A DNA stretch of 64,000 bases from Utricularia gibba (Eukaryota > Plantae > Magnoliophyta). Of this stretch, positions 38,239 to 61,660 are shown piece by piece. The notes under the pieces were generated by a model, which had not been told where the DNA came from, did not search any database, and saw nothing but the letters and a program-made list of their open reading frames with translations. Numbering within the stretch: the first letter of the stretch is position 1; every line of letters begins with the position of its first letter. A program made the position numbers and the translations under genes. The stretch covers positions 186,001 through 250,000 of the forward strand of contig NEEC01000018.1 of assembly GCA_002189035.1 (NCBI GenBank), in the 5' to 3' direction.

Positions 38239-39599
38239 ACCTATCTCATAGCATGAAAGACAGCTGAATTTTATGCACATCAATCTTATCATTAAGCATT
38301 CACGAACACTTCAACAAAAGTTTTCAAGAACCATTTGCAACTTAGGAACAAATAACGACTAGCATTCTCTAAATAGTCCATGCTAATCCATTCATGCATA
38401 GACACTATTTGTTGAATGACTATCGTTATATCCACACTAGGATTGCAAATAGTCAATAGCTAAGGCTTGTGCTTTCTTACCAATGTCTAAAAACTAGACT
38501 ACAATGTCATAGTGCTTCATGCACCACTGCATGATTTCTCTACGCACCAAGTGCGATGCCCTATATACCAAATGAAGAGTAGTGAGGATTTCTTTTGCGT
38601 TGCACATAGACAAGCACTGCAAAAAAAAAAAAAAAAAAATACCCAGAGTTCTACCAGTACATCCTTCACTCCGAAAATCTGCAAGAACACCAAGACGTGA
38701 GCCATACACAATGGCGAAAAGTGTGATAGTGGCATAGTGAAGCTAAGATCTTTATAAGGAATGGGGTGGAGGCAGCTTCAACCTATAATGAAAATGCTCG
38801 GTGCTCACACAAAAGATGGTGGTGCCAACTCTTTGCGGAGGTTCGGAATCAGAAGAATGTCCTGGTAATTTATCCCACATCACATAGGTTTTTGGAATTG
38901 AAAAACATGCTTGCAACTAATCTGCATAAATACCTGAACTCAACCTTGGAAATGTCATTTTCAGTGTGTCGTTGATTCAAGGTACACCATAGATGATGAA
39001 GAAGTGAAGTGGTAGATTATGTGCGGTATTGGGTGTTTGCTGTCGAGTGGTTTTTGCGGTGCTTCATCAGGAGAGTATGATGGAAGAGGAGGATGAAATA
39101 CTCATTGGAAATAATGCATTGTCATTAAGAATAATGAAGTGCCAAATGCAATTAATGTGCACAAAGAGGAATTGAATTCACATTGTGTAACTTCCAAGTC
39201 CTAATAAGTGGTGGTTACTTTTTCTTAATGATAATAATAATTTTATAGTGAGTTTTAATTGGAAAAAATGTATTATTTTATAGGAATTAGCATCTTACCA
39301 GGAATTTCGACATTTTAGTAGTAATCTAAGCTTTATTTTTACTGAAAAATTTGGAGTAAGTCAATAATTTAGTTTAAATCTTGTTCTTATTTTATTATTC
39401 TAAGTTAGCAGCATACACAAGTATTTCACATCTCAGGAGTCTATGACGAGTCATGCCTACTCTAAGAAATGAGACAGCAAATGGAAGTCTATGATAACAT
39501 AAAAAAGAGGGAAAGAAAGGAAGGTATACATGAATCAAAAAAACGGAAGGAATAAAAGAGGAAAGAGAGGATGAAAAAAAAGATGGGGATGATGAAAAA

Positions 39600-41037: not shown

Positions 41038-41195
41038 GTCCATCCCATTATTTTGTGATAATAAATCAGCCATTCATATTACACAAAATCCAATGTTTCA
41101 TGAACGAACTAAACATATTGAGATTGATTTCCACATTTTATGTGAAAATTTTGATAAAGCATTCCTAGTTCCAAAGGATGTGCCTTCAACATCAT
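41038..41195 (+). pseudogene. Isolated Ty1/copia RNase H C-terminal fragment
   Basis: [30 protein letters not shown]. Confidence 0.8.
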
Positions 41196-41199
41196 GTTC

Positions 41200-41990
41200 T
41201 CCAAGAAGAAACTCTAGGCATGGTCCTTTCGTAACAGCACGTTGTATTTCAGAAATCCAAAGATCCATCTCTTCGTCGATAGTGATCTTCTCAGGGGCAT
41301 CTTCTTCCTATACTGGAGAAGGGATGAATGTAAATCAGGGATTGCCTTGTCCTTACCCTCTTCTCCAGCAATTTCCATCGGTTGTGGGGTGCTGTGGGCT
41401 CTCGAGAGCAGAAATTGCTGCTGGGGAGTTTGGCACTGAAGGTTTCAGCTCGTCAATAGCAATAGTAGCAGCAGCAGTAGTTGGGTACCACTCCAGGTAC
41501 AACACTAGAGACACAATAATCACAGGTGTGGCCTCAATAAGTGCATATTCCGGTGCAGCGCCTAGAGATGGTTCATGCTCAGGGGAACGGAAGCTTCTAC
41601 TGGGTCACTGGTGCAGCGACTCTAGGTTCCATGGGATGGTACAGCAGCAATAGTTTTGTGCTTCGGATTCGCTGCCTTAGCAGCACTTGTGCTTGGGTAA
41701 CTAGAGATGTGGAGTGGCCAGTCATGGTGAGAAAGAAAATTGGAGAATTTCAGGCGACAAGAGGAGGAATTGAGGCATAGGTTACAGCGTGAAGTGGGAT
41801 AATAGTCGGTAAAATGGGATTTCAAAAATAATGGAGTGGGAGATTGAGTGTGGAACCATTAAAAGAGGAAGTGGATGTGTGGGGTAGGTGAAATTAAAGT
41901 AACCTGAGGTAGTGGGTGATAAAAATGAAGAGAGAGTCATGGGTTACCTCTCATGCAGTGCCAATTTATAATCTTTGACTGATTGTAACA
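41200..41990 (-). pseudogene. Probable Athila extra (env-like) ORF relic
   Basis: Lies directly downstream of the integrase, with coding-like broken frames (e.g. [22 protein letters not shown]). The identity is inferred from position only. Confidence 0.3.
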
Positions 41991-41994
41991 CCTG

Positions 41995-44900
41995 TTAAAG
42001 GGCCTCAACTAGCAGTAAGCTGCACACACTATACGGCTGAAATTTCTCATAAAATGGCTTCAGTCGATGTCTATTAAATTTAATGTTTTTCCCTGTCTCA
42101 AATGAACGAATGACAACAACACCAAATGGGAAAACATTCACAAATTCACAAGGTCCAAGCCACTTAGAATGCAATTTTCCCGGAAAGAGTTTCAAAAGAG
42201 TATCAAATAAGAGAACTCTTTGACTAACAAAAAATTGTTTTTCATGCAACTTACTGTGGAAGCCTTTTACCTTTTCTTTGCTAGTCAGTTTGCATGACTT
42301 GACGGCCTAGTATGCCCCGTGATGAAGTTCAAAAGGAAGATTGCCTTACCATAGATCATTTGATATGGAGACATTTCTATGGGATTCTTGTAAGCAGTAC
42401 GGTATGCCCATAATGCATCATTGAGCCTTAAGCTCCAATCTCACCTATTTGGATTCACGATACACTCCAAGATACTTTTCACTTCTCTATTTGATACTTC
42501 CACCATGCCATTTGTTTGAGGATATCTAGCTGTGGATAGGCAGTAGTTGACTCCATACTTAGTCAATGTACCCTTGATGGTATGATTCACGAAATGATTC
42601 TATACTTAGCCAATGCGCTCTAAAATAATAATCTTGGGATATCCAAACCTTGGGATTAAAATGTTAGTCAAGAAGTGACCCACAGTTTTTGCATCATCCC
42701 TTTCACAAGCAATGGCTTCCATCCATTTAGAAACATAATCTACCGCAAGAAGGATGTAGAGGTTCCCATAAAGTCATAGAGGTTCCCATAAAGTCAATGC
42801 CTGATGCATCAAAGATCTCGCACATGATAATGGGTTGAAGGGGCATTCAATTTTTGTATCCAAAATTTCCTCTTCTTTGATAATTTGGGCATGTTTTGCA
42901 ATGAAGGTAGGCATCCTGGAATATTGTAGGCCAATAAAAGCTAGCCTCCAAAACCTTCTTTGCAGTAACTTTTGCATAAAAATATCCACCACAAGATAGC
43001 TCATGAGAATATGAAAGAATAAAGTACACTTCATCTTGGGGGATGTATCTCCTAATAACTTGATCGACATCAATTTTCTAAAGATATGGGTCGTCTCAAA
43101 TGAAATTCAGGCTATCAATCCTCAGTTTCTCCTTCTGGTAGCGCTGGAAATTTGCAGGAAATTGTCCAGTCATTAAATAATTTACGATTTCAGCGTACTA
43201 GAGACTCTTGTCATGGATCCTAAATAAGCATTTGTTAGGGAAGCTGTCATTGATAAGACTTCACTTTTCTTCAGAAGTGATGTAGATAAGATGATCTACA
43301 ACTAGATTCTCGCATCCTTTCTTGTCCTTGATTTCCAAGTCGAATTCTTGAAGCAATAAAATCCATCTAATGAGTCTAGGCTTTGAATCCTTCTTGGTGA
43401 GGAGGTATCTCACTCAAATAAGATCGAATAGACTCTGACTTTAGCTCCTAGCAAATAAGATCGAAATTTGTCCAGGGCAAACACAATGGCCAATAGCTCC
43501 TTTTTTATAATAGTATAGCTTTTTTGAGCATCATCAAGGCACTTGGACGCACAATGAATCACATGAGATTGTTTCTCCATCTTTTGTCCCAAAACTGCAC
43601 CTAGGCCAACCACTTCATAATCTCCTTCTTGACCACTTCAATCATTGAGGGGTTCAATCTCCTCTAGACCTGACGAATTGGCTTTGTTCCCACCTCCAAA
43701 TAAATGTGTTGACTACATATAGATGAGGTTATTCTTTTGATATCTGCCAATGTCCAGTCAATTGTCTGTTTGTGCTCCTGGAGCATACTCCTGAGTTTTT
43801 CCTCCTGTTCTAGGGTTAGTGTATTAGAGATAATAATAGCTAAAGTCTCATTTTCGCTAAGAAATAAATATTCTAAGTGATCAGGCCGGGTTTTTAACTC
43901 TAGTAATGGGGCATGAATAACATAAGGAATCAACTGTTTCTCAGACATTTCCAATCTTAGAAAAGCAACATCAGAAAAATGAGATTTTTCAGGCAAATAA
44001 TCAAGATAACTCAAAAGTTCAAATGAGAAAAAAGAAATACTATTAGAATGAAAGTTTTCTGTAAAGCATGTGAGCAAGGGATCTTGCTTATGAACCATCG
44101 TTAAGTATTCTACATCTGTGTCAGATGTAGATACTGAATACATCTCATTAATCTGGTGCGAGTACTACATGGCTTTGTCCAGAATGAAGTGTAGCACCTG
44201 TCCATTGAACACTAGAGAGATTTCGTTGTCTTGTACATCAATTTTGGGGCCTGTAGTAGCCATAAACGGTCGTCCCAAAATGATGGGCTCTAAAATCATG
44301 GGATTTTCACTCTCCATGGGACTAAAAAGTTAGTAGGAAAAATCAAATATTTAACATGAACAAACACATCATCAACTCTACCATCAGGCTTCACATGTGA
44401 TCTATCAGCTAATTGACAAACAACACTACTAGCCTCAAATTTACCTAGCTTAGATGCAAGGGAAAGATAAAGAGACCTAGGCATAACATTAATCGATGCT
44501 CCTAAATCACACATGGCAACTGAAAATTTTGTCTCACCAATAGTCACATGTATGGAAAACATACTTGGATCCTTAGACTTTCGTAGAATTCTCCTTTGAA
44601 TAGTTGATGAAATATTTTCAGTCAAGGGTATCACCTCTTTCACTTTTGTCTTCTTCTTGGGGTCACACAATTCTTTTAACATTTTTTCATACTTGGGCAC
44701 TTCCTCTATCATATCCATCAAGGGGATGTTCACATTGACCTTCTTCATCATCTCCATGAATGCGTTCAATCCACGTTTGTCTTTGCTCTTCCTTCGAAGT
44801 CTCATAAGAGAAGGAGTTGGAATGACCAAAGACTTGGATTGATCAACTTATTGTGTCTCCTTCTCCTTTGGATTTTCGAGTGGCACCGGTGCAGTAGTTT

Positions 44901-46049
44901 CCTAGACTGGAGAACCATCAAGATTCTCTAAAACGATTTCCTCATCCACATCATCATCATTGTCCAAGAGTTCTAATTTTTTTTCTTTAGGTGTCCTCCT
45001 TAGTCATGGACCCTAGGTAAGAGTCCGGAAGATCCTTCCTGCTTCTCAAAGATATTGCTTTGATGTGCTTTGGGTTCTTCACTAGCTAGGATGGCAGTCC
45101 TCCTTGCGTCTCTAGATGGTTCATGGCTTGCACCAATTGGGTGATTTGAGTTTGCATGCTTGTGATTCGTCCATCAATGTCTTATTGTGCAGCATGCATT
45201 TTCGTGGTGCTCTTGGCAAGAGACTTCACCATAAACTCCAGATTATGATTCGAATGATAAGGAACAAGAGGTTGATCGAGAACTCCAATGATCTGTAAAG
45301 GTTGACACGAAATGGTGATAGTTTTCTGAGGGACATCAGAAGGATTCCCTAGTAATGGGGCTTGACCAGGAGGTACTGATTGTCTCCAACGGAAACTAGG
45401 GTAATCTCTTCTTAGCATCTGGTTGTTTCCATAATTGTAGGTTCCTCCATGATTCTAGTAGAATGTATTAACCTCTTCTACTGGCATCTCATGTATCATA
45501 GGCCCTTGATCTGAATGAGAAGAAGTTAAAAATCCTTGATAAATTCCTTGTTGTTGGAGAAGTGAGTGAAAACCAAGCTTCAAGATATCACTCATAGCAG
45601 CAAATTAAGCTAAAACTTTAGAATTGTCCAACTTGTGTACTGATTTGATTGGCTGTGAAATTCCTTTGGGTGATTAATATGAATGGTCATATCAACTGGA
45701 ATTAAAATAAGAATTAGCAGCCATTTTTTCTATCAATCTTTGGGCGTTAGCACTGTGGTGGTTCTCTAGTAATGACCCATTACAAACGGCATTCGATCAT
45801 GGGGGTCAATCCTTGGTAAAAATGCTGTAATATTTGACCTTCAATAAGTCCATGCTGTGTATAAGTATTACAGATCCGGTTGAATCTATCATATTACTCT
45901 TGCAAATTCTCTCCTTCACTTTGTAGCATGGTGGCTAAAGCTCTTCTTCCTACAGAGGCTCTTCCTAGGTACGCATATCGATCAATAACTTTCTAAACCA
46001 TTTATTGCCAAGTTGTAACACAGAGCAGTGGTAGTCCAGTCCGTACAAC
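41995..46049 (-). pseudogene. Athila gag-pol pseudogene (gag core, protease, RNase H, integrase) with the RT deleted
   Basis: gag EGENLQE*YDRF..HGL..FYQGL; protease AMCDLGASINVMP..QLADRS; RRLNPSMIEVVKKEI fused directly to the RNase H segment GLGAVLGQ..KELLAIVFALDKFRSYLLG; integrase GFYWPTIFQDA and LKLFPGKLHSKWLGP. Confidence 0.9.
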
Positions 46050-47300
46050 TGTTGGGTTTCTCGTAGACATCGTATGTCTCAAAAGCAGCGGAATTTTAAA
46101 ATTTTGAGAAACCTCAAACGCAGATCTTGGAATACGATATACATCAGATGAAGGGATGTTCAAAATACCTTTCAAATGACTCCGTTGTTCACCAACTGCC
46201 AATAGCAGACGGCCTCTATGGTATCCACACGTGGAGCACTCCGTCGATAACCTTCTCAAGGCTCTTGAATGATGGTCGAATTCCTCAGGTACTAGTAGAT
46301 AAGAACGCCTCCTTGTGGATCAGTCTCAGAGAGCACGGAGACCTTGGAGCAAATCTCAAAATCTAAATCTTTTTTATAGATATTTTGTGACATATCAAAT
46401 CATATCTCTATAAGATCTTTTATTTTGAGTTTAATCAATATTAATCTCAAAATAGCTATCTATTTAATTTATCCACTTTACCAATTACATCTCATGTAAT
46501 TGTGTCATTCTATTTTATATCGATGAGTGAACCCACTATTGTGTGTGACCCTATAGGCTTCTTCAATCAAGGCTGTAATAATAGATTTATTAATTAACTC
46601 TTAATTAATCAAATCCATCATTATCAATCATGAGTGATGTCTAGCAACATATCATTATTCCCAAGATTAAAGAATAATTAGGTGAACTGATTGAGCCTTT
46701 TCATGACCAGCCACCATGCAATGAACAGATTTCATCATATTTATATCTCATTCGATACCAGAACATGAGTTTGTGTCTTTCTAATGTATCGAACTTATAA
46801 TTGCATTCAAGCACTAACACTCAATGACCTACTCAAACAATTTGAGTGTCATTACCCTTGGCCCAGGACTTACTGTTAGGCTTTGATGCAATTACTTGAG
46901 ATATGATCTCATAGCTAACATGAGTGATGTATCCTTTATTGATCAATCAACTATCTCCAATCTTAAGGAGTCACATCCCTAGTCATCCATACTAGGGAAG
47001 CCATGGTTAGGCTCCCATTAGTAATGAGCGAAAATGTGAGCTTAAGATCAAGATAACTTTGTTGACCTCAAGTCTAAGTTTACTTGCACGGCTATCATAT
47101 TCGAGATCTTGCTACTGACACTTGGTTAGCTTCCCATAGTAGCATCTCGAAGATGAGTCATCTAGTGAATTGATTCTCTAATCGACACCCATACATAAGT
47201 TCTAGTAATCTCATTACATCAATTGTGAGAAGCATTGCCTAAACAATTTAGGGAACTCAATGTGTGAAATGTGATATCCTCATTTCACAAATACTTGCAA
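46050..47300 (-). mobile_element. Ty1/copia Angela-like LTR, 5'-truncated, inserted in the Athila gag
   Basis: The minus-strand end is GAGAAACCCAACA at 46050. It is an inverted homolog of 59327-60578 (about 85-90% by eye). There is no PBS. The lineage call is from remembered LTR motifs and is tentative. Confidence 0.65.
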
Positions 47301-47366
47301 TTTTAGAATACGTGGTGCTGTGTCAATTAACTTATGTTGCCCGATTTTGGTGACTGTTGAGGGGAC

Positions 47367-48711
47367 ATGGATTTTTTCACAGAGGGTCATGTCATCTTGA
47401 GTGTGGCAGCAGTAGTTTTGTCTGAATACTTGGTGCAGATGAATGTGTTAGTATACTTACATTGGAAGAAATACCGTAGGGGATATAGGGTGCAACGCAA
47501 GTATTCGCTTACACACAAGATTCCTAGACAAGTTGAGTTTATTAGTAGGTTTGCGAGTGATGTGAATAGCGCATCCATTGAGAATTTGAGAATCAGCCGA
47601 GATGCGTTGGGTATTTTATGTAGCCTATTAGAAAATCATTCTAACTTAAAGGCTGGAAAATATGTAACGGTTCCAGAGATGGTTTGTATTTTTTTAGGAA
47701 TATTAGGTCATCATAAAAAAATGCGGGTGCAGAAGCATGTCTATGGGAGGAGCACCGAGACTGTGTCTAGATGCTTCCAAAAGGTGCTACACGCGGTGCT
47801 TTGCCTCCATGAGGTGTTGTTAGAGACCCCTGTAGTTGCTGCAGAATGTGCATCCAAAGGGAAGTTTAAACACTTCCAGGTAGACACATCTTTCATGCTT
47901 CATTTTACGAATGTGTATCCTAAAAATGATTATGCATCTGTAGGGTTGTGTTGGAGCCATAGATGGTACATACATCAGTATACGAGTTAACAACTGTGAT
48001 GCTGCAAGGTAAAGAAATCGAAAGGGGGTGATATCCACCAACGTGTTGGGTGTATGTGATGAACACATGAAATTTATATATGTGCTTGCTAGGTGGGAGG
48101 GGTCTGCTGCAGATAGTCGGGTGCTAAACGATGCACTCGCACGATCTGACGGCTTCCGTGTATGTCCAGGTATTTCACTTGTTTAGCCCTTGCACATGTG
48201 ATTCCGATGATTTTAGGCACCATGTATACGTGATGACACAGGAACATATTACCTATGTGACAATGGATACGCCAATAGGGAGGGCTTTTTGGCACCATAC
48301 CGTGGGGTCCGTTGCCACTTGAAGGAGTGGGGTCAGGGAAGTGGTGCGCCACAGAATGCAAAGGAGCTATTCAACATGCGGCATGCATCAGCAAGAAATG
48401 TGATCGAACGAGCTTGGGGCTTGATGAAGATGCGGTGAGGTATACTACGGACGGCTAGCTACTATTTCGTAGACACACAGAAACACATTGTATTAGCATG
48501 TGCTTTACTGCATAACCTCATTCGAAAGGAGATGGTGGTCGATCCCCTGGAGGATCAGGTTCCATTGGACTTCCAGGATGAAGCTGGGGATAAGAGTGAT
48601 TCAGAAGACGTCACGACATCTGCCGGAGGCAGTCAGGCATGGAATAGGTGGCGTGACCAGCAAGCCGAGAGGATGTACACCGAGTGGCTGGCATCCCGCA
48701 GACGCCGCTAG
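47367..48711 (+). pseudogene. PIF/Harbinger DDE transposase (3 exons, two premature stops)
   Basis: Exons 47367-47879, 47944-48169 and 48242-48711. Motifs GCVGAIDGT, RNRKG..TNVLGVCD, WEGSAADSRVL, YYLCDNGY, ELFNMRHASARNVIERAWG. Stops are TAA at 48010-48012 and TGA at 48436-48438. Confidence 0.93.
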
Positions 48712-48950
48712 TGTAGCACTGTATTAGTAATTGTCGTGCTAGTGGTTTTCTTGAATTCCCGTTCAAGACCTATCGTGTCGTTTTGTACTGTATTGCTAAG
48801 CACAACTATGTGCTTAGCAAAGCCATGTCCCAAAATCCCGTTTGTACTCCAACTTGAACTTGAAATTGCCGAGTATTTGGTAGTTGCTGCACAAATTGTT
48901 GGGATTGTACCATACTGTCATGTCTTAACATGATGGATCATTGGAGCCAA

Positions 48951-49385
48951 CACCGCGATCTTCAGTTGAGGTGCTACAGAGACTTGATGGACACCACATT
49001 TGTTGGTAGCACCACATGTTTCATCGTATCCGGTGCTGATAAAAATTAGATATTAGATGAGTGGGAAGCTGGTGCATAGTAGGAGGGTAGTTGGCAGAAC
49101 AGGAATGCGCCTTTTCACCAAACACCGTGATCTGTAAACTCTGGTGCTTCGGAACGCCTGGGCTATGCCCCGTTTAGTGCTGCACCGCATGCTTCCTCAT
49201 ATCCGGTGCTGACAAGATTTAGTAGTACATGCGTATGCACTTGGAGCATATTATCGTGGGTGATTAGTAGTACAATAATACTCCTTGTAATTAAACACTG
49301 CGAAAACATAATCCAGTGTTTATAAATACCTGAGCTACGCTACGCATTCTGCAGCACCGCGAAATGTGTATCCGGTGTTCTGAGT
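48951..49385 (+). repeat. Degenerate ~172-bp tandem array (2 units plus a partial third) between the transposase and ORF3
   Basis: Units start with CACCGYGATCT at 48951 and 49123. TATCCGGTG occurs at 49027, 49200 and 49369. Confidence 0.75.
49321..49328 (+). promoter_or_regulatory. TATA-like box upstream of ORF3
   Basis: TATAAATA lies about 350 bp upstream of the ORF3 ATG/acceptor at 49679. Confidence 0.35.
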
Positions 49386-49678
49386 TCCATAAACAAATCG
49401 GCAAAAAATATTGCAGTTATCTAGCATTAAATGAGAAGGGCGGTTGACAACCGCCCAGTGCTATTAATATCCCCACTGCGCACAATAAAGGCGCTTGACA
49501 TTGTGCACTTTCTAAAACAACTTCATTAACTCCTCCCATCCAACTCCACCCTTTCGGCAAACGTGCAGCAGCACCGTGAAAACCGATCCTCGAAAAATTC
49601 TCAAGAACAGCGTCGCGACTAACACGTGTTTCAAATTCTTCGTTGCCATCGTTGACTAACACGCTCCTTGTTTTCCAG

Positions 49679-50536
49679 ATGTTGAAGTGTGAGAAACTAC
49701 ATATTCGCTTCTCAATTCATGACAGTTACACGATATGGGATAAACAGCCGGGTGAAACGTCGGACGGCGAACCGTCATCCAGAGGTGGAACATCGGGATT
49801 CACTGTCACCACCGAGCACTTTCGGTGTGGATTGCGACTCCCCCGCCCCTTTCTTGGTGCAGATACTTGCTGCACTCCAGATCCCATTCTCCCACCTCAC
49901 ACCACGTTCTGTGGCGCACATTCTCACATTTCTGCAGATCTGTGAAGAAGAGGACATACCCCTGGAAATGCGTGTCATCTTTGCGGTTTCTGTTTGTGTC
50001 CAACACAAGGGGAGTCCGCACTACTCGCTTCATGGAAAACCTGGTGTGGTTCTTGTTATAGACGTGAGAAAGGCATATGATGATTGGTGGACCAGTTTTG
50101 TATGGGTATGCCCACCCACCGCTATAGAATGGTCAACAACGTTGATAGTGTCAGAGAGTGTAGGACACCCATCCGGTAACCATACAGAATAATTTCGGTG
50201 TTGCACACATCTTGTGCAACAGTACTCATGTTTGTTGATGTTTTTGTTGTAGGCATAGAGGTGTTGCCGAAACGTGCGGCAAGGAGGTTCGTGAATTTGT
50301 TCTCTTGCAGAACAAAGTCCTTTGGAGGACGTCTTGCCCCCTTCGTCAATGCCCCTAAGACACAGCATCTGTGGTGCGGAACCCCTCGACACCGTCGACA
50401 ATGTACGAGTACAAATGATGATCCTGAGGAGGTGACCCATGAAGAGCAAGAAGATGTGCAGCCAGAAGTCAGGGGCAATACGGATGGGCCAACACCGATC
50501 TGGAATCACGATGACGGGTGTGGTGCTATCCTTTGA
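49679..50536 (+). pseudogene. Third ORF of the PIF element: Transposase_28 / 'putative gypsy-type transposon'-like domain plus acidic tail, spliced, one frameshift
   Basis: Reads KLHIRFSIHDSYTI..PGE..HFRCGLRLP[frameshift at the C-run 49840-49844]APFLVQILAALQIPFSHLTPRSVAHILTFLQIC..GSPHYSL..LVIDV..DDWWTSFVWV. An in-phase 77-nt intron (50176-50252) joins it to GIEVLPKR..DDPEEVTHEEQED..*. Confidence 0.7.
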
Positions 50537-50624
50537 AGTGCTCATATCAGTTTAAAAGATGATTAGAAGACGAAATACATCTAGTCCATGACTCCAACAT
50601 AAGGCGGAGCACCACACAACAGAT

Positions 50625-51675
50625 TTAAGATCTACTTTCGGATACTAAACCATGCACAATAAGCTCTCTCTCATAGTCGCTAGAGGCAAGGAAATAGCGC
50701 AACCTCGCAGGGTTGGAACTAATCGTCTCTGCTATGGTAAAATGTTCGATGGCAGTTAATTGCACCGGCATACCTCTAATGATCTCCCTTGCCTGATGCT
50801 GATTATCCACCAACTCCCGTGCTTGCTGCACCACTATTAATCCCAAGTGACGTAGCTCTTTGCATGTGCGCACGTTAAGCTCCTTGATTTCTGTGATAAA
50901 CTGCACATCATCATCGATTCCCCTTGGTCCCATGCCGCTTTGTCCAGTGCGCCGCGTCAAGTCGGTGGTATTGTGTGATTCAGAGTCCCTACTAGGCGTG
51001 ACGTTCACACCCTCTGCAGCGCAACCAATTGGGGCACAAGGTGTGTCAGCATACGATAAGTTCATATCATGTCTAGTGCTATCCGGGTCCAGAGGGCAAT
51101 CCGAAGATACTTTCAGATTCTCCCCCACATCTTCCATGAATTTCCTCTTCTTGGTCATGGCTACATAGCTCATCGTTTCTTCTCCTGTAGCCTGATCCTT
51201 TCCAAAGATTTCTTGCCACTCCATGTAATACGGCCACGCCTTGTGTCTTAGGGCGCACAGTCTGGGTGCATGCTGACATAATAACACGGTCAGCACCGGA
51301 TATAACACAGCAACAACAGGGCATACATACCTGATCAATCTCCTTCCAAACCTCATCGTCTGCGTCTACGGTGTAGGTCAGCTCACTAAGACCGGTGCTT
51401 GACCATGATAAAAAATCTACAAGGAGGTAGTAGTCTTTTTTCCAGGTGTGAACCTTGCTAGATATATGGGGGTGTGCGTGGATGTCGGTTCTAGGTCGGA
51501 GTTTCAAAAACTCTATCTCTAACGCTCGATGATACCCACCCCTAAAACCATTCTCAATTTTCTAGACTTCTTTCACTATCTGCTTCAAAGCGTGTAACAA
51601 GTCTTTCTCTTCATCTGGCTTCCAGGCGCGTTTCGTTTTTTTGTGAGACTCTTCCACCACGTTTGGGCTATGCAT
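50625..51675 (-). pseudogene. PIF/Harbinger ORF1, Myb/SANT-like DNA-binding protein (one premature stop)
   Basis: Motifs KRAWKPDEEKDLL, ENGFRGGY, HISSKVHTWKKDY, ADDEVW and AWPYYMEWQEIFGKDQATG. Intron about 51273-51330 (short, inferred). TAG at 51562-51564 replaces a Trp. An upstream exon is possible. Confidence 0.88.
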
Positions 51676-51899
51676 ACCTGCAATCTGTGCTGGAGGAAAG
51701 AAAACAGCAAGAACAAAGCACCTACACCGAACACTTACCACAAGTAAACCGTAAAATTCACTCAAAATTCAACGGATTTCAAACGAGAAACTCTGTGCAA
51801 CGAAGGGAGTATACAAACTAGATGTAACCCATGGCTCTTCAGTCTCAATTACTTGTGAAAACGAGAGACTCGTCAACCGACAGCACCGTGACAACGCAC

Positions 51900-52047
51900 T
51901 GTGAAAGTCGGTGGACGAAGAGGGTAATGGTAATAAAGAGGAATATGTCTGAATGAGTAAAGTGGGTGTGAAAGTCGGTGGACGAAGAGGGTAATGGTAA
52001 TAAAGAGGAATATGTCTGAATGAGTAAAGTGGGTGTGAAAGTCGGTG
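51900..52047 (+). repeat. Perfect 67-bp tandem repeat (about 2.2 copies)
   Basis: gtgaaagtcggtggacgaagagggtaatggtaataaagaggaatatgtctgaatgagtaaagtgggt starts at 51901 and 51968, with a partial copy at 52035. Confidence 0.95.
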
Positions 52048-52247
52048 CACAAGTGTGAAATTCTATATTAGTAAATTCCCATGAAAATTATGTATAAACC
52101 CAATTTTATATCCACCTACCAAACGTGGGTTTATTTAAACCCAAATAATGTAAACTCATCAACCAAACATGATTCATAGAGACTAAATCCACAAAACCGG
52201 GTTCCCTAAACTCAAATATACTAAACCTGGGTTTAGTCCAAACCCAG

Positions 52248-52262
52248 CAACCAAACGCGCCC
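52248..52262 (-). repeat. Right terminal inverted repeat of the PIF element (GGGCGCGTTTGGTTG on the minus strand)
   Basis: Matches the GGGCNCGTTTGG-type PIF/Tourist TIR and is flanked by TAA. Confidence 0.85.
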
Positions 52263-52476
52263 TAATGGTTCTTAGTAGTGAGCCATGATTAATGATCAAT
52301 AGAACTAGAAAATTTACAGGATGAAGTTGCTCATGTTCTCCGTGAACCATAGGGACTCCAGTAGGTTGTTGAGCGGTCATTTCTTTGTCAGTAGATGAAC
52401 TGGAAATTAATTCTTGCTTTTTCACCAGAAATGTGCGCTCAATCTCTGAATCTAAGGGGCACAAGATTTCCTGCAA
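52263..52476 (-). pseudogene. N-terminal part of the Athila gag, separated from the rest by the nested insertions
   Basis: LCPLDSEIERTF motif, located between the 5' LTR and the PIF TIR. Confidence 0.7.
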
Positions 52477-52521
52477 GCTTTACCAACCATTTCTATCTTG
52501 TGTGCGCCACCAGTTTTCCCA

Positions 52522-59200: not shown

Positions 59201-60578
59201 TGTCATCAAATTAATATCATTGATAAAATCCTCTATTTGATCTATATGCTATAGAAATTATGATGAGATCATAATGTGAGATTCTTCAAAGCATTTATAT
59301 TCAAGTTAAAAACTCCCTAGCTAGAGTGTTTGTGAAATGAGTATATTATAAATACGGATAAGCTAGCACACATTGAGTTCCCTAAACTGTTTAGGCAATA
59401 GTTCTCACAATTGATGTAATGAGATTACTAGAATCTATGTGTGGGTGTCGATTAGAGAATCGATTCACTGGATGACTCATCTTCAAGATGCTACTATGGG
59501 AAGCTAACCAAGTGTCATTAGCAAGATCTCGAATATGACAGCCATGCATGTAAGCTTAAACTTGAGGCCAACAAAGTTATCTTGATCTTAAGCTCACATT
59601 TTCGCTCATTACTAATGAGAGCCTAACCATGGCTTGCCTAGTATGGATGAGTAGGGATGTGACTCCTTAAGGTTGGAGATAGTTGATTGATCAATAAAGA
59701 ATTCATCACTCATGTTAGCGATGAGATCATATCTCAAGTAATTGCATCAAAGCCTAACCGTAAGTCCTGGGCCTAGGGTAATGACACTTGAATTGTTTGA
59801 GTAGGTCATTGAGTATTAGTGCTTGAATGCAATTATAAGTTCGATACATCACACACCCATGTTCTGGTATCGAATGAGATATAAGTATGATGAAAGCCAT
59901 TCATTACATGGTGACTGGTCATGGAAGGGCTCAATTAGTTCACCTGATTATTCTTTAATCTTGGGGATCATGATATGTTGCTAGACATCACTCATGATCG
60001 ATAATGATGGATTTAATTAATTAAGAGTTAATTAATAAATCCATCATTACGGCCTTGATTGAAGAAGCCTATAGGGTCACACACAACAGTGGAGTTACTC
60101 ATCGATATAAAATAGAATGACACAATTACATAAGATGTAATTGGTAAGGTGGATAAATTAAATAGAGAGTTATTTTGAGATTAATATTGATTAAACTCAA
60201 AATAAAAGATCTCATATAGATATGATTTGATATGTCACAAAAATATCTACAAAAAAAATTTAGATCTTGAGATCTGCTCAAAAGGTCTTCGTGCTCTCTG
60301 AGACTGATCCACAAGGAGGCGTTTTTCTCTACTAGCACCTGAGAAATTCGACCAGCATTCAAGAGCCTTGAGAAGGTTATCGACGCAGTGCTCCACGTGT
60401 AGATATCATAGAGGCTGTCTGCTATTGGCAGTTGGTGAACAATGGAGTCCTCTGAAAGGTATTTTCAGCATCCATTTGTCTGATTTATACCGTATTCCAA
60501 GATCTGCGTTGGGGGTTTCTCAAAATTTTTAAAATTCCGCTGCTTTTGAGACATACAATGTCTACGAGAAACCCATCA
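59200..60578 (+). mobile_element. Angela-like copia LTR nested in the Athila-type element
   Basis: Inverted homolog of 46050-47300, ending GAGAAACCCATCA. The left boundary is approximate. Confidence 0.65.
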
Positions 60579-61660
60579 GAAACCTCTGCTCAAACACTCA
60601 CAAACCGAAGGAATGAAAAAGGCTACTGCTGCAAGGAGCGAATTAACATGGTTTATGAAAGGCTTGGGCATTTGTTAAAGGAAGTGAAGGAACTGAAACA
60701 GGGAGTGAAGGACTCCTCAGTGATCAAGTAACATCATTCCATTGCCTCATCTTTATTTTTATTTTTATTTTTATTTCTATTTTTATTTTGATTTTTATGG
60801 TGTTAGTCTAAGTTAGGAGTAATTTAGTAGTGCAATGTTATGATCAAGAGAATTTTGTGAATGGTTGAGGAATTTTCTTACAAGTATGAGATGTTTCTCA
60901 TGATGCACGAAATGCATGAATTTCGTTATGGCCATTTATGAACCAGTGAGCATGTTTTCCCTTGCTTATTTTCATGAGGTAGCAGCATGCTCAATGTAGT
61001 CAGATTGGTGAATTCAAGATTTTTTTTAAGCAAATTGGCATGTGTTAATCTTTCTTGGAGGATTGGTTATCGCAAAATCCGTAGACAGCAAAAATAAACG
61101 GGTCAGAAAAGCATCATGACCAGAAAAGCGATGAGACCCACGTCTTGAAAAGCAACACTCAACAAAAGAGCGTGTGTGGACGGCAGAGTAAAGAGCATAG
61201 GGAGGTTATGAGAACAACTTAGAGGTGTAGAAGGGACCCCCGACGAATAAGGTGGAGAGTGCATTGCCCACACTCACATACAAAGAGGGGAAGCAAAAAT
61301 TACCTGAGTTGAACTCTAAATTCTCCCTGGTCTCGATCTCTGTAGAAAAAAAAAAGAGAAAGAAAGAGAATGAAAAAACAAAAGAGAGGAAGAGAAAAAA
61401 ATAGTAGTGACAACCACCATCCTTTGAAGGTAAGCATATGTTATTCTTGCTCATTTAATCTTCGAATGCACCTTTTAGGATGAAACTGTCATGTATGCTT
61501 GAGTGACACCCTCACATGCACACTGGCACCCCTTCAATTCATGCATTTTGAGCTGAATGTTAAGCATCCAGATCAATGTGTATGAGATTCATTAACTATT
61601 TGCCTCCTATTAGTCTTAGTTAGTACTTGAGGACAAGTATAGTGTCGTTGTAACATAATG

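What the first reader, a model, noticed from the sequence alone, without database searches (positions are those of the whole stretch)
47367..51675. PIF/Harbinger transposon carrying a third, spliced gene with a Transposase_28-like domain: candidate accessory (anti-silencing?) module
Seen: the arrangement is transposase(+), ORF3(+), ORF1(-). ORF3 (49679-50536) has an acceptor with a TGACTAAC branch-like motif before its ATG, an in-phase 77-nt GT..AG intron and an acidic tail. Its core is F..GLRLP..PFLVQIL..L.I..S.LTP....I..F..IC...G..Y.L...LV......W...FVWV. No LTR, PBS or other retroelement sequence flanks it, and its composition matches the rest of the element. Established: PIF/Harbinger elements canonically encode two proteins. 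This motif pattern is that of the Transposase_28 (PF04195, 'putative gypsy-type transposon') domain in antisense extra ORFs of Tat-type retrotransposons, whose function is unknown. Arabidopsis VANDAL Mutator-like elements encode accessory VANC proteins that counter silencing by binding repeated motifs in the element's non-coding regions. Inference: a three-gene PIF lineage that acquired or shares this domain as an accessory factor, possibly a chromatin or anti-silencing protein. This copy is decayed (one frameshift in ORF3, stops in the other two genes). I do not know of a described PIF family like this but cannot exclude one.
Basis: partly seen in the sequence, partly recalled or inferred. 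Interest (0 to 1): 0.88.

Follow-up and report, generated by a model that had tools for sequence, protein, structure and literature searches.

The report
Three-gene Harbinger transposon, dead truncated copy
This is a worn-out, cut-short copy of a many-copy plant cut-and-paste transposon (PIF/Harbinger type); besides its two usual genes, the family carries a third gene whose domain is otherwise known from a side-gene of Retand retrotransposons, and I found no paper describing this arrangement.

Summary
Window 47302-52262 is a 5'-truncated PIF/Harbinger copy: a DDE_Tnp_4 transposase (+, two in-frame stops), ORF3 (+), a Myb/SANT-like ORF1 (-, one stop), and a right TIR followed by TAA.

ORF3 exon 1 gives a near-threshold Transposase_28 (TRP28) hit. 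The hit is cut short by a frame break in a C-run. ESM-Atlas features agree with TRP28.

Contigs of three DNA runs of the same species show a many-copy family. ORF3 exon 1 lies in about as many distinct contigs as the transposase and ORF1, so it is not a one-off capture.

A second, older ORF3-like relic at 38549-38904 differs mainly at third codon positions. That points to long purifying selection on this gene type, but the relic is not shown to lie in a PIF element.

Other copies run on in frame past 50527. This copy's "acidic tail plus stop" is therefore probably not the gene's true end.

The intron, expression and the anti-silencing role remain untested.

The scan found three-gene Harbingers before on other DNA of this genome. 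Those notes describe a TRP28 + phosphatase-like gene; I found no phosphatase-like part in this copy. No paper I searched describes TRP28 in a PIF element.

The parts
47302..52262 (+). PIF/Harbinger family copy, 5'-truncated (no left TIR, no left TSD)
   Evidence: Family contigs match from about 47302 (loose end before 47332). The right end is at 52262: contigs diverge after it with low agreement. GC is raised over the whole span. No left TIR anywhere in the window.
47367..48711 (+). Transposase gene. Exons 47367-47879, 47944-48169, 48242-48711. In-frame stops at 48010-12 and 48436-38.
   Evidence: DDE_Tnp_4 scores 27.5 bits (above the 24.8 cut-off) on 48241-48435 and 21.1 bits on 48013-48171, colinear on the profile. 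Frames and motifs.
48951..49579 (.). Spacer upstream of ORF3, with two degenerate copies of a ~173-bp unit and repeated CAGCACCG / CACCGYGA motifs
   Evidence: Direct repeat 49009-49049 / 49182-49222 at 83%; 118 nt at 71%. All 6 CAGCACCG sites of the window lie in this element (0.26 expected). 5 of 7 CACCGYGA sites do too.
49679..50175 (+). ORF3 exon 1: TRP28-like module, with a frame break in the C-run at 49841-49849
   Evidence: PF04195 E 6.5e-5, 23.5 bits. Atlas features 0.96 to TRP28 clusters. Conserved against the relic at 38549-38904, with third codon positions saturated. Some other copies have two extra letters behind 49844, which keeps the frame.
50176..50252 (+). Predicted 77-nt intron of ORF3 (GT..AG)
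   Evidence: Read from the sequence only. Without splicing, the frame stops at 50190. No RNA contig covers it.
50253..50536 (+). ORF3 exon 2 as read in this copy: a basic half, then an acidic half, stop at 50534-36. Breakpoint against other copies at 50527/50528.
   Evidence: Open for 93 codons; P about 0.006 given composition. No Pfam or Atlas recognition. Seven X5 contigs run on after 50527 with a shared unlike sequence that keeps the frame open and is absent from the window.
50625..51675 (-). ORF1 (Myb/SANT-like). Exons 51675-51331 and 51272-50625. In-frame stop at 51564-62.
   Evidence: Myb_DNA-bind_3 E 0.012, 16.9 bits, profile positions 50-95 of 96. Frames.
51900..52047 (.). Perfect 67-bp tandem duplication (2.2 copies) in the 3' subterminal region
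52243..52265 (-). Right terminal inverted repeat (20 nt, starting GGGCGCGTTTGG on the minus strand), followed by TAA
   Evidence: Contigs of other copies diverge at 52263.
38549..38904 (-). Second, heavily decayed ORF3-like relic (exon 1 only), with no transposase or ORF1 beside it
   Evidence: tblastx E 5e-26, 41-70% amino-acid identity in four colinear pieces. Nucleotide identity is about 59%.
46049..47295 (.). Very-high-copy LTR-like repeat abutting the truncated 5' end of the element
   Evidence: Summed depth is 10-15 times that of the element. An inverted partner at 59367-60579 is 92% identical.

Best explanation
Window 47302-52262 is a dead, 5'-truncated copy of a many-copy PIF/Harbinger DNA transposon family.

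Shown or well supported:
- Members of the family carry a third gene between the transposase and the convergently oriented Myb-like ORF1.
- The first exon of that gene encodes a Transposase_28 (TRP28)-like module. This domain is otherwise known from the antisense extra ORFs of Retand/Tat LTR retrotransposons.
- In this copy the gene is broken by a 2-nt loss in a C-run.

Probable:
- The gene has also lost its 3' part at 50527/50528. The 'acidic tail plus stop' would then be a linker cut short, not the natural end.

Inferred, not shown:
- The intact protein is a nuclear DNA- or chromatin-associated accessory factor acting in trans on transcription or silencing of family copies, not on the cut-and-paste chemistry.
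- The reasoning is that the same domain is kept by elements with unrelated transposition mechanisms.
- A possible target is the repeated CAGCACCG / CACCGYGA motifs in the element's non-coding parts.
For: Element identity: DDE_Tnp_4 above the cut-off on one exon and colinear on another; a Myb_DNA-bind_3-like ORF1; a TIR followed by TAA.

TRP28 assignment:
- Pfam E 6.5e-5 over profile positions 17-58.
- 69 of 100 nearest Atlas clusters are TRP28.
- Read across the break, the spacing G-4-P-9-L-12-P-x-8-F matches 5 of the 6 conserved TRP28 positions reported in PMC11963269.

Family-wide presence, as X1/X5/X6 contig counts:
- ORF3 site 50071: 12/27/22.
- Transposase site 47994: 13/29/20.
- ORF1 site 51034: 11/30/13.
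- Thousands of pieces were laid at 80-99% identity over the whole stretch.

Coding constraint: against the relic at 38549-38904, codon-position identity is 0.66/0.72/0.40 (Fisher p 1.5e-6). dN is 0.37-0.41 and dS is saturated.

Truncation: 7 X5 contigs continue past 50527 with one shared sequence that keeps the frame open and is not in the window.

Motifs: all 6 CAGCACCG sites of the window lie in the element's non-coding parts.

Literature: TRP28 is kept in 97% of recently active Retand clusters and is predicted to bind DNA (PMC11963269).
Against: - The Pfam score is below the gathering cut-off.
- No homologue was found in any protein search. So there is no alignment and no usable structure (pLDDT 49).
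- No RNA contig covers ORF3, and the intron is unverified.
- The relic used for the selection test is not shown to be PIF-borne, so the constraint may date from another context.
- Contig counts come from unitig-like contigs. No single contig was shown to link ORF3 to both neighbouring genes.
- Exon 2 is unrecognised by Pfam and Atlas.
- The sequence after 50527 in other copies could be a local divergence or a small insertion, not missing exons.
- The function is argued by analogy only.
Confidence: 0.6

Rival explanations
1. ORF3 as read here is complete: a two-exon, TRP28-only gene with a basic patch and an acidic tail. It would define a PIF lineage distinct from the TRP28 + phosphatase-like three-gene Harbingers noted elsewhere in this genome.
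For: - The frame is open for 93 codons after the predicted acceptor (P about 0.006).
- 18-20 X5 contigs cover the ORF3-ORF1 gap at 50571 and 50592.
- No NIF/FCP1 hit in any ORF on the ORF3 side.
- A one-letter loss at 50321 and a one-letter gain at 50336 in other copies would restore the same frame if they co-occur.
Against: - Seven contigs diverge at exactly 50527, seven bases before the stop codon, and stay open in frame.
- The tail has no recognisable features.
- No contig was shown to bridge 50527/50528 in the window's configuration.
Confidence: 0.3
2. Passive cargo. A piece of a Retand extra ORF, or of a host gene with this domain, was captured once by an ancestral PIF element. It then hitch-hiked through amplification with no function for the element.
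For: - DNA transposons do capture gene fragments (general knowledge).
- The selection signal comes from a relic of unknown context.
- The copies seen are decayed, and frame-changing indels are common at the C-run.
Against: - The gene has its own predicted acceptor, ATG and intron, and a spacer with repeats.
- It lies in about as many distinct contigs as the two core genes.
- Earlier notes on this genome report the same domain in several Harbinger and MULE families (not tested here). That fits retention better than accident.
Confidence: 0.2
3. One-off nested fragment of a Retand/Tat element inserted into this single PIF copy.
For: The domain is typical of Retand elements (PMC6317226, PMC11963269). 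Gypsy-like remnants lie nearby in the window.
Against: - ORF3 is covered by many contigs of other copies at the same identity range as the rest of the element.
- No LTR, PBS or TSD surrounds it.
- Its composition equals that of the rest of the element.
Confidence: 0.03
4. Chance open reading frame with a spurious domain hit.
For: The Pfam score is below the cut-off. Two minus-strand frames are also open across 50030-50545.
Against: - Independent Atlas support.
- A frame-specific conservation pattern against the relic.
- Matching spacing of conserved TRP28 residues.
Confidence: 0.02

Closest known systems
Canonical plant PIF/Harbinger elements (PIF, Pong, MtPH families)
   Same: DDE_Tnp_4 transposase; a separate Myb/SANT-like ORF1; a Tourist-like TIR with a TAA flank; VNTR-like subterminal repeats; internal-deletion derivatives.
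   Different: Canonical elements encode two proteins (PMC2836001, PMC5543537 abstracts; PMC2213677 mentions no third ORF). This family has a third gene between them.
TRP28 (PF04195) antisense extra ORFs of Retand/Tat LTR retrotransposons (Grande gene23, RIRE2, Retand)
   Same: The same domain signature; unknown function; often next to tandem-repeat arrays; kept across the lineage (PMC11963269, PMC6317226).
   Different: Here the domain sits in a class II element, in the same orientation as the transposase, with predicted introns and no LTR, pol or PBS around it. Sequence similarity is too low for any phmmer hit.
VANC anti-silencing proteins of Arabidopsis VANDAL (Mutator-like) elements
   Same: An accessory gene of a DNA transposon beside the transposase, together with repeated short motifs in the element's non-coding regions (PMC5735166, PMC10398659).
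   Different: No sequence relation was tested or shown. VANC is linked to MAIN/PMD-type proteins (PMC13547354), not to TRP28. Binding and hypomethylation are untested here.
Three-gene Harbingers and MULEs with a five-exon TRP28 + FCP1/NIF-like gene, noted earlier in this genome by this scan
   Same: The same genome, the same position of the extra gene between transposase and ORF1, and the same N-terminal domain type.
   Different: This copy has no NIF-like part. Whether that is a deletion or a different lineage could not be settled, because I could not read the other loci.

Membership tests
PIF/Harbinger superfamily | DDE transposase of the DDE_Tnp_4 / Plant_tran type | tested here: met
   27.5 bits against a cut-off of 24.8 on 48241-48435. 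21.1 bits on 48013-48171, colinear on the profile.
PIF/Harbinger superfamily | Second gene encoding a Myb/SANT-like DNA-binding protein | tested here: inconclusive
   Myb_DNA-bind_3 scores 16.9 bits, E 0.012, below the 23.6 cut-off. Only the C-terminal half of the profile is matched. The motifs look typical by eye.
PIF/Harbinger superfamily | Terminal inverted repeats and a 3-bp TAA/TTA target-site duplication | tested here: inconclusive
   The right TIR is present with TAA beside it. The left end is missing from the window.
Transposase_28 (PF04195, TRP28) | Profile score at or above Pfam's gathering cut-off | tested here: inconclusive
   23.5 bits against 26.2, E 6.5e-5, profile positions 17-58 of 69. 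The first 16 positions lie in another frame because of the break.
Transposase_28 (PF04195, TRP28) | Conserved positions G21, P25, L34, P46, N47, F55 (PMC11963269) | tested here: met
   Read across the break with the spacing of the copies that have two more letters there, G, P, L, P and F fall at the right distances. N47 is R. The comparison was done by hand, not by alignment to the published set.
Transposase_28 (PF04195, TRP28) | Language-model feature neighbours are TRP28 clusters | tested here: met
   Score 0.96; 69 of 100 hits; recognition 2513.
Retand/Tat extra ORF | Antisense position between pol and the 3' LTR of an LTR retrotransposon | tested here: not met
   ORF3 lies between the PIF transposase and ORF1. 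No LTR, pol or PBS flanks it.
TRP28 + FCP1/NIF fusion gene of earlier notes | C-terminal NIF/FCP1-like phosphatase domain | tested here: not met
   No Pfam hit at E up to 1 in 50198-50536 or 50255-50536. Only about 90 nt lie between the ORF3 stop and the ORF1 stop.
VANC-like anti-silencing factor | Sequence-specific binding to the element's non-coding repeats, causing loss of methylation | not testable with these tools
   I could show only motif enrichment in the non-coding parts.

The most novel reading that the evidence does not exclude
TRP28 is a portable transposon accessory module that has moved between class I (Retand) and class II (PIF/Harbinger and, per earlier notes, Mutator-like) elements. 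It would work as a sequence-specific regulator or anti-silencing factor, binding the element's own repeated non-coding motifs (here CAGCACCG / CACCGYGA). That would make it a functional counterpart of VANC with an unrelated fold.
Probability: 0.15. Interest if true: 0.85.

Novelty: new variant of a known kind. Interest (0 to 1): 0.58.

Why it matters
PIF/Harbinger elements are textbook two-gene transposons, and TRP28 is a domain of unknown function treated as a hallmark of one retrotransposon lineage.

A PIF family that carries TRP28 family-wide shows the domain is not tied to reverse transcription. It points to a role in something all transposons face, such as transcription, chromatin or silencing.

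It also gives a small DNA-transposon context in which to test what TRP28 does.

Tried and rejected
Searches that came back blank:
- Word-index protein searches with the ORF3 167-aa ORF, the ORF1 243-aa ORF and the transposase 207-aa piece.
- Exhaustive phmmer of the ORF3 core against 1.84 billion representatives: 0 hits. The whole-library E-value is harsh for a 109-aa divergent domain, so this says little.
- Metagenome scans with the ORF3 core and with the 22-mer that follows 50527 in other copies.
- Exact-protein look-up of the ORF1 piece.

Analyses that led nowhere:
- AlphaFold on the single ORF3 core sequence gave pLDDT 49, too poor for a fold search, so none was run.
- ESM Atlas on the N-terminal 57 aa and on exon 2 gave no recognition.
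- Pfam on the nearby gypsy/copia-looking ORFs and on the relic gave no hits.

Readings I considered and dropped:
- The apparent joint 48106 to 48241 in the possible-RNA run X10 is not a splice. The contig holds 113 unaligned letters between the two blocks.
- The inverted repeat 49007-49027 / 50508-50528, which ends at the breakpoint, is at the level expected by chance. The flanks do not support an inversion.
- Summed depths from contigs were not used to rank parts of the element, as the tool warns against it. Contig counts at variant sites were used instead.
Full report
**What is there**

The GC-richer block at about 47300-52260 (GC 0.45-0.49, flanks 0.35-0.39) is one transposon copy.

Transposase (+ strand):
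- It starts at 47367 and stops at 48711.
- Two short GT..AG introns (47880-47943 and 48170-48241) restore the conserved blocks around GAIDGT and YYLxDxGY.
- Two in-frame stops remain, at 48010-12 and 48436-38.
- The exon piece 48241-48435 scores 27.5 bits on DDE_Tnp_4 (cut-off 24.8).
- The piece 48013-48171 scores 21.1 bits on an earlier, colinear part of the profile (weaker versions).

ORF1 (- strand):
- It runs 51675-50625, with one intron (51330-51273) and one in-frame stop (51564-62).
- Its first exon gives a sub-threshold Myb_DNA-bind_3 match (E 0.012).

Ends of the element:
- The right end is a 20-nt TIR at 52243-52262, beginning GGGCGCGTTTGG on the minus strand, followed by TAA.
- Contigs of other copies diverge from one another exactly after 52262.
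- No left TIR exists anywhere in the window.
- Family similarity starts at about 47302, directly beside a 1.25-kb very-high-copy LTR-like repeat at 46049-47295.
- The copy is therefore 5'-truncated.

**ORF3**

- TGACTAAC lies at 49653-60, followed by a pyrimidine run and CAG, then ATG at 49679. This suggests an upstream non-coding exon.
- The reading frame changes inside the C-run at 49841-49849.
- GT at 50176 and AG at 50252 (77 nt) carry the frame into 50253-50536.

The part after the break gives PF04195 at E 6.5e-5 and 23.5 bits, over profile positions 17-58 of 69. That is below the 26.2 cut-off because the first 16 positions sit in the other frame.

ESM-Atlas features of the same 109 residues place it among TRP28 clusters: score 0.96, 69 of 100 hits.

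Read across the break, the G, P, L, P and F residues fall at the spacing of five of the six conserved TRP28 positions in PMC11963269 (G21, P25, L34, P46, N47, F55). N47 is R here.

Exon 2 is open for 93 codons (P about 0.006 given composition). Its first half is basic and its second half acidic. Neither Pfam nor the Atlas recognises it.

**Is ORF3 part of the family?**

I laid Logan contigs of three DNA runs of the same species, from three studies, at 80% likeness or more. The whole stretch, ORF3 included, is covered by thousands of pieces at 80-99% identity.

At sites where all other copies differ from the window, the numbers of distinct contigs are similar across the three genes:

| Site | Region | X1 | X5 | X6 |
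|---|---|---|---|---|
| 50071 | ORF3 exon 1 | 12 | 27 | 22 |
| 47994 | transposase | 13 | 29 | 20 |
| 51034 | ORF1 | 11 | 30 | 13 |
| 50358 | ORF3 exon 2 | 8 | 19 | 3 |
| 50571 | ORF3-ORF1 gap | 11 | 18 | 18 |

This rules out a one-off nested fragment. It does not by itself prove physical linkage on single molecules, because the contigs are short.

At the C-run, some copies have two more letters behind 49844, which keeps the frame. Others have one more behind 49845. The break is therefore a variable, decay-type indel at a hot spot.

Changes between copies are dominated by C>T and G>A. That is the expected mark of methylated, silenced repeats.

**Was it ever under selection?**

A tblastx of the element against the window found a second ORF3-like relic at 38549-38904 on the minus strand (E 5e-26).
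- It aligns only to 49709-50054.
- It is riddled with stops and frame breaks.
- It has no transposase or ORF1 beside it.

Over 104 comparable codons:
- Identity is 0.66, 0.72 and 0.40 at codon positions 1, 2 and 3 (Fisher p 1.5e-6).
- dN is 0.37-0.41 and dS is saturated.

This gene type, including the N-terminal part upstream of the Pfam domain, therefore evolved as a protein for a long time.

Two caveats apply. The relic's original context is unknown, so this is not yet dN/dS within PIF copies. Its frame break at the same C-run is of a different kind (one letter, not two), so the two breaks are independent.

**Is the gene complete here?**

Probably not. Seven X5 contigs match up to 50527 and then continue with one shared sequence (agreement 0.95). 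That sequence keeps the ORF3 frame open, whereas the window reaches a stop seven bases later. The sequence is nowhere in the window and was not found in JGI metagenomes.

Earlier notes of this scan, on other DNA of this genome, describe many-copy three-gene Harbingers and MULEs. In those, the extra gene has five exons and joins a TRP28-like domain to an FCP1/NIF-like domain. I could not read those loci.

In this copy no NIF-like part exists. My best reading is an internal deletion at 50527/50528. A distinct TRP28-only lineage remains possible (about 0.3).

**Function**

Nothing here tests function. Three things are established:
- TRP28 is kept in 97% of recently active Retand clusters and is predicted to bind DNA. 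The related Grande protein is nuclear (PMC11963269; PMC6317226).
- DNA transposons can carry accessory anti-silencing genes that bind repeated non-coding motifs (VANC: PMC5735166, PMC10398659).
- All six CAGCACCG sites of the 64-kb window lie in this element's non-coding parts (0.26 expected). Five of seven CACCGYGA sites do too.

I infer, at roughly one chance in three, a nuclear DNA- or chromatin-binding accessory factor acting on transcription or silencing. The argument is that a domain shared by elements with unrelated transposition chemistry is unlikely to serve that chemistry.

**Expression**

One run guessed to be RNA (X10) holds a 241-nt contig on the transposase and a 716-nt unspliced contig on ORF1. 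Both are from other copies, and none lies on ORF3. This shows neither expression nor silence.

**Novelty**

No paper in the searched library combines Transposase_28 or PF04195 with Harbinger/PIF, or describes a third PIF gene. I rate it a new variant of a known kind: a transposon accessory gene. The scan has already met it on other DNA of this genome.

**What failed**

All protein homology searches were blank. As a result there is no alignment, no usable structure (pLDDT 49), no census of copies, and no tree.

Noticed in passing
window 38549-38904 (- strand): A heavily decayed relic of an ORF3-like (TRP28-like) exon 1. It shows 41-70% amino-acid identity to ORF3 in four colinear pieces and sits in an AT-rich region with no transposase or ORF1 nearby. 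Its original element is unknown.
   Followed up: partly
window 46049-47295 and 59367-60579: Two copies of a ~1.2-kb repeat in inverted orientation, 92% identical over 1221 bp. The unit starts TGTTGGG. Its summed contig depth is 10-15 times that of the Harbinger family. It looks like an LTR, and the left copy abuts the truncated 5' end of the Harbinger copy.
   Followed up: partly
window 49031, 49204, 49352, 49569, 51291, 51881: The 8-mer CAGCACCG occurs six times in the 64-kb window (0.26 expected), and all six are in non-coding parts of this element. Four are in the spacer upstream of ORF3, one in the ORF1 intron, and one upstream of ORF1. The related CACCGYGA lies at 48951, 49123, 49355, 49572 and 51884.
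   Followed up: partly
window 51900-52047: A perfect 67-bp tandem duplication (2.2 copies, 100% identical) in the 3' subterminal region of an otherwise old copy. It is either a recent local duplication or a VNTR of the kind described for Medicago PIF elements.
   Followed up: no
window 49617-49626 and 49654-49663: The 10-mer GACTAACACG occurs twice, 37 nt apart, just upstream of the ORF3 ATG. The second copy holds the branch-point-like TGACTAAC.
   Followed up: no
window 47000-52500 (table 1): Differences between family copies are dominated by C>T and G>A: 219 and 222 places in X5, against 25-112 for the other change types. This is the pattern expected from deamination of methylated cytosines in silenced repeats.
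   Followed up: no
window 41093-41653 (+) and 41995-44143 (-): ORFs that look by eye like a copia-type RNase H end (TKHIEID) and gypsy-type pol/integrase pieces. Pfam gave no hit on these fragments, so they remain unconfirmed.
   Followed up: partly
window 50321 and 50336: Relative to much of the family, this copy has one extra T in a T-run and one C fewer in a C-run, 15 nt apart in ORF3 exon 2. If the two differences co-occur, only five codons change and the frame is kept.
   Followed up: no
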